NCBI GenBank assembly: GCA_001179505.1
Contig: CDMY01000227.1
Coordinates: forward strand, 62,001-126,000
Length of the DNA: 64,000 nucleotides
Source: Vitrella brassicaformis CCMP3155
Taxonomy: Eukaryota; Protista; Chromerida
Direction of reading: 5' to 3'
Positions 20,979 through 26,900 of this stretch are shown one piece after another. Positions within the stretch are counted from its first letter, which is position 1. Each line of letters begins with the position of its first letter. A program made the position numbers and the translations under genes. The notes beneath the pieces are model-generated. The model was not told the origin of the DNA, did no database searches, and was given only the letters and a program-made list of their open reading frames with translations.

Positions 20979-23900
20979 TGGGGTATCAGCCTGGCTACGA
21001 TGCGGAGGTCGACGTGGCTGGCGGGGAGAAGAGACCCTTCACCTCAGGTACGACGCACGCACGACGGTCCGCCGGTCTGTCCAGATGGACTGACGGGTGT
21101 GTCTGTGTCATCACACGGGAGGGAATGAGGAGGGAGATCTCTACTGCCGCCTCTCTGCATTTGCATCTGTGTGCTGTGTGTGTTCTGTCGTGTGCTGGTT
21201 CATATCAAAGGGGATGGTCGCTGGTTCTTGCCTCACTGTAGCGGTCATGCGCTGGAGGGGCGCGTGAGTGCCGCGCCCAAGAAGAAAGATCGACTCGTCC
21301 TCGAGTTCGCACTGCCGGGCGGTGGCGTCAAGAAGGTACACACACGCAGAGGCGCACACAAACACAAACACACACGGGCGCGCACTCAGTGATCGATCTT
21401 TTGTCTGTGTGTGTCCTCTTCTCTCCGTGTGTCGTGTCGGTGTGTGTGTGTCAGTTTTACCAGTGTAACTTTTGTCGCGACGAGAAGGGCATTCAGGAGT
21501 GGGTCTTCCACAAGAACTACGTCCACCAGCACATCCCCCGCCACCACAAGAACCACTGCCGCCTCTGCCAGTGGTGCGAGCAGCTCATCTTCGAGGAGGT
21601 CTTCGACACTCACACCAAGACATGCGAGAAAAGGGGCAAAGTCGTCAAGTCACAAACCGGCAGACGCAAGCGGGTCCAGGTTCACCCCCACTACCACCAG
21701 CAGCAGCAGCACATGGACAACACACCAATGTCCATGCTCACCACAGCCGGCCCGCAGTCGCCCCAGGGGTCACAATACAGTGGAGTCGGCTCGCCCACGC
21801 CCTACCAGCAGCAGCAGCAGTCCTACTCGCCCCAGCCCAACTATGAGAGCGCTGTGCAGCACCGCCAGTTTATCGCGCAGCAGGCACTTGGCAGCCACGA
21901 CAGCCCGGCGCCCTTCGTCTTTGGCGAGGCGTTGGCCTTGCCGCCCTCCCTCAATATGAGCGGCGACACAGCCCCCGACAGCCAGCAGACACAGACAGCC
22001 AACTTCGGCAGCCAACCGACGGCCCACTTCGGGCTGTATCCCAATGGCAATGGCGGGGATCAGCCGCTGTCGCCCCCGACCTCCCCCCTTCCCCCTCCCC
22101 CTCCCTACCCACGAGTCAGCAACCCCTACCACTACTCCAACATCAACATGCAGCAGCAGCAGCAGCAGGAGGCTGCCACCCCGCCCCCGTCGATGATAGC
22201 TGGCCCCGCCTATGGTGTGCCAGCTGGGCAGGCGCAGCCCTCTCATCCCCCCACACCGTCGCCCGAGCCGCCCTCGTTCATGCAGCGTCTTGCCAGCCAG
22301 TTCTCGCGCATGGTGCCGGGGCACACGCAGTCGAGCCCCGCCCGTCCCCCATCTCTCGACCAGGCCGTCACCCCAGACCCATCAGCATCAGCTACAGCAG
22401 GCCAGCTGCAGCAGGATAGAGTGACGGTCAAGCAGGAGTCCGGTGGGTCAGATTACGGTCCCCATGGAACGATGTCTGTGGCCATGCCCTTGCCCGTGTC
22501 GATGTCCATGCCCATGGGCACCACCTTCGACACTGGCCTCCTCAAGTCACAGTCGGGGTCGTCACTGCAGCTGGGTTTTGATAACGAGGCCGGCCTGCCC
22601 TCAATCCCCGAGCACGACTACGGCGAGGGTATCCAGATGGACGGCACCGGGCCCGGCCTGACCCTCTCCCTCTCCCTACAGACCCCGCGCGACAACGACA
22701 TGGACGCCGACGCCCTCCCCGCCGCCCCGCACGAGAGCGACTACCTGGGTGGCGGGGTGGCTTCCTCATCGGTCGACTACGGCTACATGGGAGGAGGGGG
22801 TATGGGCGAGGCTATGGGTGGCCCCAACGCCCTGGCGCAGGAGCCGTGGCCATGGGAGGGGCAGCTGGACACCGCCGACATCGTCAAGCGGGAGGCGGCC
22901 GACAAGCGAGGGCTCACGACTTCGATGCAGGACGTGCTGCCGGGCGCCAAGCGGCAGCGGGTGCAGAGCGTGGCCGAGGAAGAGGACAGCGTCAGTGGCA
23001 GCGTCGACTCGAGCACGGACAAGGGCCACCGCAGCAACAGATACTCGGACAAGACATACGAGACAGTGGAGATCAGAAGCCCCTTCAGCCAGAACTCCGC
23101 TGCAGCCACAGCCACCCAGCGTGGCACGCCGCCTTTCGGCGGGCAGCCCGGGTCGATGCTGGCGGTGCCGCCCACTCCATATGACCTGGGAGCGCCTGTG
23201 GGCAGCACCAGTGGTTCTGTGGCGAGCTTCCCTGCTGGTGCGGTTCTGCCGACCAACCAGGTGCAGCTGAGTGAGAGCCTGCTGCAGCAGATCCGGGAGA
23301 GCGGCAATGCCGTGGAGCTGCTGAAGGAACGGTTTGACATCGACTCGGAGGTCGACCTGGACGCCCTGCTCATGTACGCAAGAGAGCGAGTTCGCAAGAG
23401 AGAGACAAGGAACACAGACAGGCCGACTGTCCATATTTCTCTCCTTGTCTGGTCTGCCTGTAGGTATCTGCTGAGCGAGTCGACGGCCGTCCCTCAGCCT
23501 CCCAACCGTGGGCTCGGTCCCGGCTCCGGCGTGGGCGACACGGCGTATTGGCACCCGGTTGTGTCCCACCTCTCACAAGACGACTTCTCGCGGGGCATGT
23601 GTATCGGCATGGACGCACGCGGCCTCGTCTCGTTCGACACCACCACAGCCGGGCAGACCATCGGCCTGGTGCCCGAGATCTCACGTGTGGCCGAGCAGCG
23701 TGACTGGTTCTGCTGCAAGATAAGCACGTCAGCTGTCGACTCGACTGCTGTGGTGGGCAAGGAGGAGCCGACCATCAAAAAGGAGAAGGATGGCGGCGAG
23801 AAGGCCGGGCAGGAGGGCACCACCGGCAAGCAGCGGATGCGGTCGCCCATGGGTGCGGTCAAGGCGCTGGGGTCGTCGATATCGCGCTCAGGGTCATCCC

Positions 23901-26900
23901 CCAAGGCGGCTTACGAGTCCATCCCCACTCTGCGGCGGCAGAGCAACACCAACGAGTCCCTGCAGCGCAGCCTCTCCATCCCACCCAACCACAGCCACGT
24001 CCTCGTCTGCCTCTATGGCCGACAGCTGGCAAAGGTGGCCTACGGCGTGCAGCCGAGCCCCGGTGATTTCCTGGTGCCCTCTGGCGACAACGACGGTCTC
24101 TGGCGCATCCGTGACGCCGGCCCGGCCCTCAACCGGTCACTCACGTCCCCCGGACAAATAAAGGAGGACACAAAGAAGGCCGCGGGAGACAGTGATGATG
24201 ACCTCAAGGGCGGTGCTGCGGGCGCGTCGGCGTCGGCTGACGACCTCCTGGAGAAGAGCGTGCGCAAGGGCGGGCAGCTCAACGGCACCATCAGCAGCGT
24301 GCGCGTGGTCTCGTCTCGAATGACGGCCGACTCGTGTGTGGAGGTGGAGGTGGTCATGAACCAGCCGCTCATCCAGTCCCTGCTCTCAGAGATCCTCGAG
24401 TACGTCAAGGCCACCAAGCCCAAGGACGGCGTCGACACCCTCACGAGCGAGGGCGTGCTAGGGAGCCCCACGTCCCTCGAGCGCCTCTACGCCTCCCTGG
24501 AGCGGCTTCACGCCGCCCTCCCTGCCAAGCTGTTCGTCCCCCCGCCGTACGACAAGCTGGTCGGCCGTTCGCGCGAGCTGCAGGCCATAAGCGAGGTGTA
24601 CCGGCGACAGGAGGCGGTGCACGGCGCCACGCCCCTACTTCGGGTGGTGCAGCTGTGCGGCCTCCCGGGGGTGGGCAAGACCTGTGTGGCGGTCGCCTAC
24701 TGCCACCACTACCTACGCGCGAGCGAGCCGGCGACGGTTGTCTCGACGGATGCGCCACGCCCACAGACGTCGGGCAGCGCCACGAGCACCAGTGCCAGCA
24801 CGGCCACGGGGGGTGACCTGGTGCAGCTGGTCAAGCGTGACATTCACGGCAGCGGCGGTGGCGGTGGCGGTAGTCAAGACTTCTCGGAGTACGACCTCAT
24901 CCTGTGGCTCAACGGGGAGTCGCGCGAGGATCTGCGCAAGAGCTACCGCCGGCTTGCGCGTGACCTCAATCTGTACCTGGAGAACCAGGACCTCACTGAG
25001 GATCAGGTGGCCGCTGCCCTCAAGATGGAACTCCTCAGGTGAGCCAGCCACACACAGAGGCAAACCAAACAGGAAGAGTGAGGTCACCCACTCCTGAATG
25101 TGTGAGTCTGGTGTCTGTGAGTGTGTGCAGGTCGAGTCAGCGCGGCATCCGGTGGCTGGTGGTGCTTGACGGTCTGGACGAGACGGCTCTCGCAGTGGAT
25201 GACATCGTCCCCACCAACGCCCGCGGCCACGTCCTCATCACCGCTCGTGTGCCACGACTGCAGTACGCCCAGCGAGGCCAGTGTCTCGAGATCGAATCTC
25301 TGACCCTCCAGGACGCCGCCAACATACTCATCCGGGCCATCCAGCCGCCGCCCGCACTGGCCCTCACCACGGCTGATACTAGCGATCGTGACGAGAGCAG
25401 CCCTCCTACCACCCCACACCGCCGTCTGCCCAAGAGCGAGATCGTGGCGGCTCGCAAGCTGGCGGAGGCGGTGGGGTGTCTGCCCATCCAGCTTGCGCAC
25501 ATTGAGGCCTTCTTCCGGGCTGGTGGGGAGCTGGGGCTGACCTACGACGAGTTCTACCAGCGGTGGTTTGTCGAGAACAACCCTGACCTACAGGTTCGCA
25601 CAGATGCGATGCAGGAGGGGACGGGAGGAAAGACAGACCCAGAGGCCCATCCCATTCGTCATGTGTGCGTGTGTGTGACAAACAGGAGGCTTTCAACACG
25701 TTTGTGGCCCGCACTCTGGACGAGGAGCCGGCGAGTGTTGCCATGGTGGCGACGTACGAGTCGTTGTCGAAGCAGAGTCAGGCGGGTGGCCGCATCGCCG
25801 AGATGCTGGCGTACTGGGCGCCGTCGCCCGTCGGCTTCCCCAAGTGGGAGGAGCTGTTCAACGCCATGGTGGGCGTCAGCCCCAGAGTCCACGACAACGG
25901 ATGGTCGCCATTCCTGGTACGCACGCAGCGCAGCGCAGCGCAACGCAGAGGGAGGGAGGGAGGTGGAGAGGTCGACTACGAGTACACGAGTGTGTGTGTG
26001 TTGCAGGACGATCCGAATCCGAATCGCGAGAAGTGGCTGCGTCGTTTCCAGAGAATATTCACCATCATACTGCTGCTACTCGCATTCGTCTTCGGTAGGC
26101 GAGACAGAAAGGCAGACAGCGACGAGTGTGACACCAGGCCTGTAGGGACATGGGTCGACCGCTGTGTGGTGTCGTCGTGGTGTGTGGCCTGTGCAGGTAT
26201 CCGTTCCGCGATGTTGAGCTGGGAATCGCTCAAGGAGTCCCTGCCGAAGCCATGGCAGCAATACCTCGTCGGTACGCCACCATGATAGCAACACACGCAC
26301 GCACACACTTTTTCTTGTTCTGCTTTTTTCCTGACACTACAGCGGCTGTGTTGGGTCTGGTGATTGTTGGCCTGATGTTGCTGGGGGCATACTACCTGTC
26401 GAGAATGCCATTCAGCTTCCTCAGGCGCCTGTGCCTCCGGAATCAACCCAAAGTCAACCCAAAAGAGGTGAGGTGCAAAGGCACACCGACCGACCCGACT
26501 GACGCGCACAGCACAGCACAGCACAGCACACGGATAGCTAACGGCAATGTGTTGTGTGTGTTTACTGACTGATGCTATGCAGCGCATCCTGTTTGTCGTC
26601 GATGTGGGCTTCGATGCACGCGGACGGCTGCCCACACAATACTGCGAATACGTAAGTGAGAGGGATGCAGTCAATGGCACAAGCACTACAGAGGCACAGT
26701 GAGTGACCTACACACGCTGTGTGTTGCTCTGAATCAATATCATCCATCCATCAGATTGAGAGCGGTGCCGATTGCAGCGGCTGCGGGCGCCACATCGACC
26801 TGAAGCAGCCCCACGCCTCCATCTTCAGCTGCGTCCAGTGCGACGGCTTCATGCTCTGCCGCAAGTGCTACTACTCCGAGCGCTTCCGCAAGCACAAGAT

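What the first reader, a model, noticed from the sequence alone, without database searches (positions are those of the whole stretch)
23530..24115. Phage tail-type peptidase G2 / intramolecular chaperone-like domain with an apparently substituted catalytic motif
Seen: GVGDTAYWHP...FSRGMCIGMDARGLVSFDT...IGLVPEISRV, then an insertion of about 90 aa, then HVLVCLYGRQLAKVAYGVQPSPGDFLVPSGDNDG. Established (from memory): C-terminal G2/IMC domains of phage appendage proteins and related bacterial proteins start with a DxAE(W/Y) motif and end with a V.l.GqvpVkV...GDy..psg.ndG-like motif, with the DxAE glutamate implicated in autocleavage. Inference: this is a phage- or bacteria-derived domain in a eukaryotic regulator. 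The Glu-to-Tyr change (DTAYW) suggests it may now be a non-cleaving trimerisation module.
Basis: partly seen in the sequence, partly recalled or inferred. Interest (0 to 1): 0.75.

Follow-up and report, generated by a model that had tools for sequence, protein, structure and literature searches.

The report
Conserved orphan domain, weakly phage-G2-like
An expressed gene of the alga Vitrella carries, just ahead of its NLR-type ATPase, a strongly conserved beta-rich domain that may be a distant, non-cutting relative of a phage tail-spike "auto-chaperone", but ordinary profile tests do not confirm this kinship.

Summary
The sequence is there as described. It lies in one exon (23464-25035) of an expressed gene. 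It is conserved in one other organism, the gregarine-like parasite Digyalum oweni, at 62-68% identity per block. Digyalum lacks the two disordered Vitrella insertions (91 and 57 aa), which are nevertheless kept in the Vitrella mRNA.

The phage Peptidase_G2 reading is not established:
- Pfam, PHROGs, NCBIfam and PDB sequence searches find nothing at E up to 10.
- My own G2 profiles, shuffle tests and a six-frame background test are negative for the Vitrella sequence.
- Only one hairpin (LVCLYGRQ...GD.LVPSG) matches the start of the second half of G2 domains above shuffles (P about 0.003).

A protein-language-model neighbour search puts the Digyalum domain next to G2 clusters (0.96). It puts the Vitrella domain next to unnamed viral and phage-cement clusters (0.93). 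The literature says these share the tandem beta-tulip fold. An unbiased AlphaFold model failed (pLDDT 32).

The supposed catalytic motif keeps Asp and Ala but has Tyr where all 118 G2 domains with the motif aligned, of the 120 examined, have Glu. That alignment is not statistically supported.

Verdict: a real, new, lineage-restricted domain. I put G2/beta-tulip kinship of some kind (cutting or not) at about 50%, and self-cleavage as unlikely. No earlier finding of this scan covers this domain on other DNA.

The parts
23464..25035 (+). Exon that holds the whole domain and the P-loop of the ATPase
   Evidence: Transcript contig, run X6 record 25, continuous over 23464-25035; GT..AG joints at 23373/23464 and 25035/25128
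23374..23463 (+). Intron (90 nt, in frame, so the raw ORF reads through it)
   Evidence: Joint 23373->23464, ends GT..AG, in an RNA contig; sequence
23528..23716 (+). Conserved block N (63 aa, GVGDTAYWHP ... RVAEQRDWFCC)
   Evidence: 63% identical to Digyalum P0001:383-446; no significant match to the first half of G2 domains
23534..23557 (+). Motif GDTAYWHP, identical in both species. MAFFT places it on the G2 cleavage motif xDYAEYFE. The Tyr codon is at 23546-23548, where G2 has its invariant Glu
   Evidence: 8/8 identical; Glu in 118/118 G2 domains with the motif aligned; MAFFT placement; not statistically supported
23717..23989 (+). Vitrella-specific insertion 1 (91 aa, disordered type)
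   Evidence: 14 aa in Digyalum; 82% disorder-promoting residues; retained in mRNA
23990..24109 (+). Conserved block M (40 aa, HSHVLVCLYGRQLAK...GDFLVPSGDNDGLWRI), the only part with a G2 match above shuffles (shown for the Digyalum-led profile)
   Evidence: 68% identical to Digyalum; hhalign P 0.003, 0/100 shuffles; blastp 46% over 26 aa to G2 protein P0124
24110..24280 (+). Vitrella-specific insertion 2 (57 aa, disordered type)
   Evidence: in mRNA
24281..24367 (+). Conserved block C (29 aa, NGTISSVRVVSS...CVEVEVVMNQP)
   Evidence: 62% identical to Digyalum P0001:~502-528
24659..24682 (+). P-loop GLPGVGKT of the STAND/NB-ARC-type ATPase that follows the domain
   Evidence: AAA_16 and nSTAND3 sub-threshold hits; the ortholog passes the Pfam NB-ARC cut-off (29.3 bits vs 23.5)
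21453..21643 (+). Conserved N-terminal Cys/His double finger of the same protein (context)
   Evidence: 47% identical to P0001:58-120; exon start 21453 from RNA contig record 23

Best explanation
The three blocks 23528-23716, 23990-24109 and 24281-24367 form one folded, beta-rich domain of about 145 residues. In Vitrella it is split by two disordered loops. It sits about 45-90 residues ahead of the NB-ARC-type ATPase of a membrane-anchored STAND protein that also has an N-terminal Cys/His finger. That protein is shared by Vitrella and Digyalum. I read the domain as a very distant relative of the viral tandem beta-tulip modules, meaning the D4 'auto-chaperone' (Peptidase_G2) of phage tail spikes and the phage cement proteins. 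It has lost, or never had, the catalytic Glu, so it does not cut the chain. It would instead act as a fixed self-association (probably trimer-forming) or docking module beside the ATPase. Shown here: the domain exists, is expressed, is under strong constraint and is lineage-restricted. Inferred: the fold, the viral kinship, the lack of cleavage and the oligomerising role.
For: Conservation: blocks are 62-68% identical between Vitrella and Digyalum, against 27% at the P-loop and no detectable match in the flanks. Expression with both insertions. Neighbour search by language-model features: Digyalum domain 0.96, 193-197 of 256 features shared, 17 of 30 hits in PF11962 sets, all top clusters viral. 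Vitrella domain 0.93, 22 unnamed viral clusters plus Phage_cement families at 0.91-0.92. These two answers name one fold class. The phi29 gp12 D4 is a pair of beta-tulips like decoration proteins (bioRxiv 10.1101/216911, read). Fold searches with a G2-type model return both gp12 D4 (3gqh) and cement proteins. MAFFT on its own lays GDTAYWHP on ADYAEYFE, at the N-terminal edge of the domain in both families. Glu is invariant in the 118 G2 domains with the motif aligned (of 120), and both eukaryotic copies have Tyr. A natural G2 member without the Glu exists (P0219).
Against: No hit in Pfam, PHROGs, NCBIfam, PADLOC or PDB sequences at E<=10. The search of 1.84 billion representatives finds only the ortholog, so no bridging sequences exist. 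Smith-Waterman against a wide G2 profile gives z 0.3-1.7 (Digyalum) and below 0 (Vitrella). Matches at conserved G2 columns equal those of shuffled sequences. The N half equals shuffles. The Vitrella domain is not the best G2 scorer among 825 six-frame ORFs of its own window. The neighbour search flags low recognition (2081 and 1781, under 2300), which it calls weak evidence. The AF2 model without G2 rows is useless (pLDDT 32). The model with G2 rows (pLDDT 64.6) is circular, and it leaves the best-conserved stretch IGL.P.I.RVAEQR.WFCC at pLDDT under 50. The context is unlike any G2 protein: internal, with no beta-helical fibre upstream.
Confidence: 0.42

Rival explanations
1. The domain is an orphan, lineage-specific fold with no evolutionary link to phage G2 or cement proteins. 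The resemblance is then a generic beta-hairpin-plus-GD pattern. The seven Cys/His residues conserved in both species (H in YWHP, C in CIGMD, CC in WFCC, H.H and C in H.HVLVC) could form a metal site at the base of the variable loop. The domain would be the effector or adaptor head of the STAND ATPase.
For: All standard profile and shuffle tests are null (N half, 84, 87). Only one 25-residue hairpin scores. The same hairpin pattern occurs twice inside G2 itself and aligns to either copy (P0078 and P0096 rows). The best-conserved stretch has no G2 counterpart. Both neighbour searches have low recognition scores.
Against: The top named family of an independent feature search is exactly the family proposed beforehand. 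Every near neighbour of both orthologs is viral and of one fold class. The local match has P about 0.003 at the predicted place. No other family scores at all.
Confidence: 0.38
2. The domain is a working self-cutting module. After assembly the chain breaks at Gly|Asp of GDTAYWHP (23534-23539) by chemistry that does not need the G2 Glu. This frees the N-terminal finger and polyQ-rich part from the membrane-held ATPase, as MYRF does with a different phage domain (S74).
For: GDTAYWHP is identical in two distant species and sits exactly at the domain edge, where G2 proteins are cut (the Dpo31 D4 chain is traced from its Asp, PMC13317679). The layout (finger, disordered Q-rich linker, this domain, then membrane spans further on) resembles MYRF logic (first-reader note s1-226913).
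Against: The Glu is invariant in 118/118 aligned G2 domains and is absent here. The alignment of the motif is unproven. There is no upstream trimeric beta-helix for a chaperone to fold. No protein-level data exist. RNA data cannot show cleavage.
Confidence: 0.08
3. The stretch is not a protein domain at all, but an unspliced intron, a mis-read frame or an assembly artefact.
For: None found. The raw ORF does read through one in-frame intron just upstream (23374-23463).
Against: A transcript contig covers 23464-25035 without joints. The ortholog in a transcriptome of another genus matches at E 1.7e-27. Three DNA runs from at least two other studies hold the identical DNA.
Confidence: 0.01

Closest known systems
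Peptidase_G2 (PF11962), the D4 auto-chaperone domain of Bacillus phage phi29 gp12 (PDB 3GQH, 3SUC) and of Dpo31
   Same: Similar size once the loops are removed. The motif at the N-terminal edge begins with Asp-x-Ala-aromatic. The hairpin hVxLxGxxxxxxxxxVxxGDxhxPxG opens the second half (P 0.003). A length-variable loop lies between the halves (about 25 to over 130 aa in G2; 14 vs 91 aa here). G2 clusters are the nearest named neighbours by language-model features.
   Different: No Pfam hit. The invariant Glu is Tyr. The motifs YFE, NEFGG and R..R.EW are missing or blurred. The domain is internal rather than C-terminal. No beta-helical tail spike lies upstream. The host is a eukaryote and the domain is fused to an NB-ARC ATPase. 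Cleavage, ATP binding and trimer state are unknown.
Phage cement / decoration proteins (PF09956 Phage_cement_2, PF22758 Phage_cement, PF23968)
   Same: They are near neighbours of the Vitrella domain by features (0.91-0.92). They have the same beta-tulip fold class as G2 D4. They are non-cutting trimer formers, which fits the proposed role.
   Different: No sequence-profile hit. Cement proteins are free-standing capsid proteins, not domains of a cellular ATPase.
MYRF / phage endosialidase ICA domain (Peptidase_S74, PF13884)
   Same: It is the only established case of a phage tail-spike chaperone domain reused in a eukaryotic membrane-tethered regulator, so it is a functional analogy for the cleavage rival.
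   Different: It has a different fold (helical/tentacle type; PMC4690869) and a catalytic Ser-Lys dyad (this detail from memory). No S74 hit here.
NLR/STAND ATPases with diverse N-terminal effector domains
   Same: The domain sits directly N-terminal to an NB-ARC-type P-loop module, the usual place of an effector or adaptor domain.
   Different: No known NLR head domain matches. The protein also has two membrane spans and a ZZ-like finger after the ATPase (seen in P0001; first-reader note s1-227172) and no repeat sensor.

Membership tests
Peptidase_G2 (PF11962) | Reaches the Pfam gathering score (25 bits) | tested here: not met
   No hit at E<=10 for the Vitrella domain whole or in pieces, nor for the insertion-free Digyalum domain. 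True G2 domains score 99-325 bits.
Peptidase_G2 (PF11962) | Cleavage motif x-D-[YFL]-[AG]-E-Y-F-E with invariant Glu | tested here: not met
   Glu is present in 118/118 G2 domains with the motif aligned, of 120. Both eukaryotic copies read G-D-T-A-Y-W-H-P. Asp and Ala are kept; Glu, Phe and the second Glu are not.
Peptidase_G2 (PF11962) | Second-half signature R..R.EW-VGLLGQ....D.TV..GD | tested here: inconclusive
   The hairpin LVCLYGRQ...V.AGDLLVPSG matches (hhalign P 0.003, 0/100 shuffles; HMMER 2.8 bits). The R..R.EW part matches only loosely (RVAEQRLW). The Vitrella copy alone scores at background level.
Peptidase_G2 (PF11962) | Tandem beta-tulip fold superposable on 3GQH | tested here: inconclusive
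   The unbiased AF2 model has pLDDT 32. The model built with G2 rows in the alignment gives TM 0.55 to 3gqh_A, but it is circular.
Peptidase_G2 (PF11962) | Lies at the C-terminal end of a trimeric beta-helical tail spike or fibre | tested here: not met
   The domain is internal, preceded by disordered Q/S/P-rich sequence and followed by an NB-ARC ATPase.
Peptidase_G2 (PF11962) | Self-cleavage, ATP binding and trimer formation | not testable with these tools
   Needs protein biochemistry.
Phage cement proteins (PF09956, PF22758, PF23968) | Profile hit to one of the families | tested here: not met
   No Pfam or PHROGs hit at E<=10. There is only feature-space proximity of 0.91-0.92.
Peptidase_S74 / MYRF ICA | Profile hit to PF13884 | tested here: not met
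   No hit.
NB-ARC STAND ATPase (context protein) | Pfam NB-ARC above cut-off, with a P-loop | tested here: met
   The ortholog P0001 scores 29.3 bits against a cut-off of 23.5. The Vitrella exon has the P-loop GLPGVGKT but only sub-threshold AAA_16 and nSTAND3 hits.

The most novel reading that the evidence does not exclude
A phage tail-spike auto-chaperone of the G2 type (not the S74 type used by MYRF) was captured by an ancestor of chrompodellids and gregarine-like parasites and welded to an NLR-type ATPase. There it still cuts the chain at Gly|Asp once the ATPase has assembled, releasing the N-terminal zinc-finger and polyQ part as a signal to the nucleus. This would be a second, independent invention of the MYRF principle, joined to an NLR switch.
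Probability: 0.07. Interest if true: 0.85.

Novelty: new variant of a known kind. Interest (0 to 1): 0.42.

Why it matters
If the kinship holds, this would be the first eukaryotic cellular protein I know of with a G2-type, tandem beta-tulip phage module. It would then be a second phage tail-spike chaperone domain reused by eukaryotes, after MYRF's S74 domain. It sits beside an NLR-like ATPase whose output domain is otherwise unknown. That would give a concrete, testable idea (a trimer-forming head) for how this unusual membrane-anchored STAND protein signals in relatives of malaria parasites. If the kinship fails, the domain is still a strongly constrained orphan fold found so far in only two myzozoan genera, and it is worth a structure.

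Tried and rejected
- **Family libraries:** Pfam, PHROGs, NCBIfam and PADLOC scans of the domain, its pieces and the insertion-free ortholog found nothing.
- **PDB by sequence and profile:** nothing relevant.
- **Protein searches:** the word search and the search of 1.84 billion representatives found only the Digyalum ortholog. tblastn against 50,697 phage records gave only noise.
- **Pattern scans:** metagenome, viral and prokaryote genome contigs hold no relatives. The first tries (46-48) failed because the alignment had fragment rows.
- **No paralogue in the window**.
- **Own G2 profiles:** I built a narrow set (59 sequences) and a wide set (73 sequences). HMMER gave 2.8 bits for Digyalum and background for Vitrella. 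hhalign gave P 0.003-0.23 depending on the profile.
- **Shuffle and background tests:** Smith-Waterman shuffles were null. The conserved-column match test was null. The six-frame background test was null for Vitrella.
- **Internal repeat test:** the two halves show no similarity, but neither do the two halves of true G2 domains, so this is uninformative.
- **AF2 with the two orthologs only:** pLDDT 32, unusable, so no unbiased fold search was possible.
- **AF2 with G2 rows added** and its fold searches: circular. I used them only to show that G2 D4 and cement proteins share a fold class.
- **Locating the ortholog:** looking up its contig failed.
- **Literature:** a paper search for Peptidase_G2/PF11962 in eukaryotes found nothing.
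- **Joined sequences:** I did not build or search a joined spliced protein or a Vitrella domain with the insertions cut out. Pieces were always given apart by reference.

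
Full report
**What is in the sequence**

The + strand carries a long ORF, 21389..25042. In its frame, 23528-23716 reads GVGDTAYWHP...CIGMDARGLVSFDTTTAGQTIGLVPEISRVAEQRDWFCC. A 91-residue stretch rich in Ser, Thr, Lys and Gly follows. After that, 23990-24109 reads HSHVLVCLYGRQLAKVAYGVQPSPGDFLVPSGDNDGLWRI.

It lies behind a second, 57-residue disordered insertion.

**Gene and expression**

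Earlier notes of this scan name the genome as Vitrella brassicaformis. I did not test that.

Contigs of public run X6 skip GT..AG introns, so they come from RNA. One 4.8-kb contig lies on 23194-23373, 23464-25035, 25128-25589, 25682-25915 and further on. This shows three things:
- The gene is expressed.
- 23374-23463 is an in-frame intron that the raw ORF reads through.
- The whole domain, with both insertions, lies in a single exon and stays in the mRNA.

All searches used exons or pieces by reference.

**Relatives**

The word-based search, restricted to the domain, found one protein, P0001, at E 1.7e-27. It is from the transcriptome of Digyalum oweni, which NCBI files under archigregarines.

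P0001 has the same layout:
- a Cys/His double finger, 47% identical
- a non-conserved, low-complexity linker
- this domain at residues 383-528
- an NB-ARC ATPase (Pfam 29.3 bits against a cut-off of 23.5)
- two hydrophobic spans and a ZZ-like finger

The domain blocks are 63, 68 and 62% identical, and GDTAYWHP and RVAEQR.WFCC are identical. The P-loop region is only 27% identical. Digyalum has 14 and about 6 residues where Vitrella has 91 and 57, so both insertions are Vitrella-lineage loops.

Nothing else turned up. An exhaustive HMMER search of 1.84 billion representatives found nothing further. Neither did pattern scans of metagenome, viral and prokaryotic contigs, tblastn against phage records, or a search of the window for paralogues.

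**Testing the G2 idea by profiles**

- Pfam gives no family at E<=10 for the Vitrella domain, for its pieces, or for the naturally insertion-free Digyalum domain.
- PHROGs, NCBIfam, PADLOC and PDB sequence or profile searches are also empty.

I then fetched phi29 gp12 (PF11962 at 643-854, 325 bits) and collected 223 G2 proteins. From these I built narrow and wide profiles.

Against these profiles:
- The Digyalum domain gives only a local hit, LVCLYGRQVAKTDSCVSAGDLLVPS on VVGLLGQvyvridetvkaGD. HMMER gives 2.8 bits and E 0.0035 for a single comparison. hhalign gives P 0.003 and 10% probability. The best pairwise match is 46% over 26 residues.
- Split into halves and compared with 100 column shuffles, the C half against the second half of G2 stands out. 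Its score is 18.8 against 9.9 +/- 1.9, and no shuffle reaches it.
- The N half, which holds the supposed catalytic motif, does not stand out (35/100).
- Whole-domain Smith-Waterman scores give z 0.3-1.7 for Digyalum and below zero for Vitrella.
- Matches at conserved G2 columns after MAFFT --add equal those of shuffled sequences.
- The Vitrella domain is not the top G2 scorer among 825 six-frame ORFs of its own window.

The rest gives none.

**Other evidence**

The language-model neighbour search placed the Digyalum domain next to viral clusters. Of its 30 hits, 17 carry PF11962 (score 0.96, 193-197 of 256 features shared). It placed the Vitrella domain, insertions included, next to unnamed viral clusters (0.93) and phage-cement families (0.91-0.92). 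Both searches carry the tool's warning of low recognition (2081 and 1781), so they are leads, not proof.

The two answers turn out to name one fold class. A preprint on the P74-26 decoration protein states that gp12 D4 is a pair of beta-tulips, structurally like phage decoration proteins (10.1101/216911). Fold searches with a G2-type model return gp12 D4 (3gqh), cement proteins of HFTV1, BB1, TW1, T1 and XM1, and PF11962 and PF09956 clusters side by side.

That model, however, was made with G2 rows in the alignment (pLDDT 64.6; residues 81-146 reach 66-85; residues 42-78 fall below 50). It is therefore circular as a test of kinship. The unbiased model from the two orthologs alone failed (pLDDT 32).

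**The catalytic motif**

MAFFT on its own puts GDTAYWHP on ADYAEYFE. Both motifs sit at the N-terminal edge of their domain. In G2 proteins the chain is cut just before the Asp. The Dpo31 D4 chain is traced from its Asp664 (PMC13317679). The cut site Ser691|Asp692 of gp12 and the role of Glu695 are from my memory of Xiang et al. 2009.

Under that alignment Asp and Ala are kept and the invariant Glu is Tyr. One natural G2 protein, P0219, also lacks the Glu (GDTCHLLEW). Because the N-half alignment is not statistically supported, 'Glu-to-Tyr substitution' is a reading, not a finding.

MAFFT also offers a second placement for the central conserved stretch, RVAEQRLW on RSERPEW. This shows how loose the N-half alignment is.

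**How it most likely works**

I commit, at about 0.42, to a non-cutting tandem beta-tulip-like module of distant viral type. It would serve as a self-association or docking head next to the NB-ARC ATPase.

The rivals are:
- an unrelated orphan fold, perhaps with a Cys/His metal site (seven Cys/His conserved in both species): 0.38
- a still-active MYRF-like self-cutter: 0.08
- an artefact: refuted

**Comparison with the known, and novelty**

The domain fails four defining tests for membership of PF11962: the Pfam score, the Glu, the C-terminal position, and a tail-spike context. Two tests are inconclusive. So I do not file it as a G2 member. The claim that it 'works like a beta-tulip trimer module' stays open.

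I found no paper on G2-type domains in eukaryotic cellular proteins. PDB chain 8h2i_cU, 'P22', carries a G2-like stretch. From memory that entry is a chlorovirus capsid, which I have not verified. If so, it would offer a route from viruses of algae.

Notes of this scan report S74-type chaperone domains in other Vitrella genes. I did not check them.

**Verdict**

The domain is a real, new, lineage-restricted domain of uncertain, possibly viral, ancestry. Interest is moderate.

Noticed in passing
window 21453-21643 (+): A conserved N-terminal double Cys/His finger (FYQCNFC...HIPRHH...CRLCQWCE...HTKTC). It is 47% identical to Digyalum P0001:58-120 and has no Pfam or NCBIfam hit.
   Followed up: partly
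window 21690-22170 (+): CAG/polyQ-type low-complexity coding repeats attract many foreign contig ends and false 'joints' when reads are laid.
   Followed up: no
window, upstream of 21209: RNA contig record 23 of run X6 has 261 nt before position 21209 that do not lie in 21000-21208. At least one more 5' exon therefore lies upstream of 21000. The start codon of the gene was not located.
   Followed up: no
P0219 (G2 family protein), residues ~154-170: A natural Peptidase_G2 domain (99 bits) reads GDTCHLLEW where the family has xDYAEYFEW. It is a G2 member without the Glu that is invariant in the other 118 aligned domains.
   Followed up: no
PDB 8h2i chain cU ('P22', 1343 aa), residues 1133-1277: It carries a G2-like stretch (E 7e-6 to phi29 D4). 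From memory this entry is a chlorovirus capsid, which would mean G2-type domains occur in viruses of eukaryotic algae. Not verified here.
   Followed up: no
window 25036-26341 (+): Further GT..AG introns of the same gene are supported by the RNA contig: 25036-25127, 25590-25681, 25916-26005, 26094-26195 and 26271-26341.
   Followed up: partly
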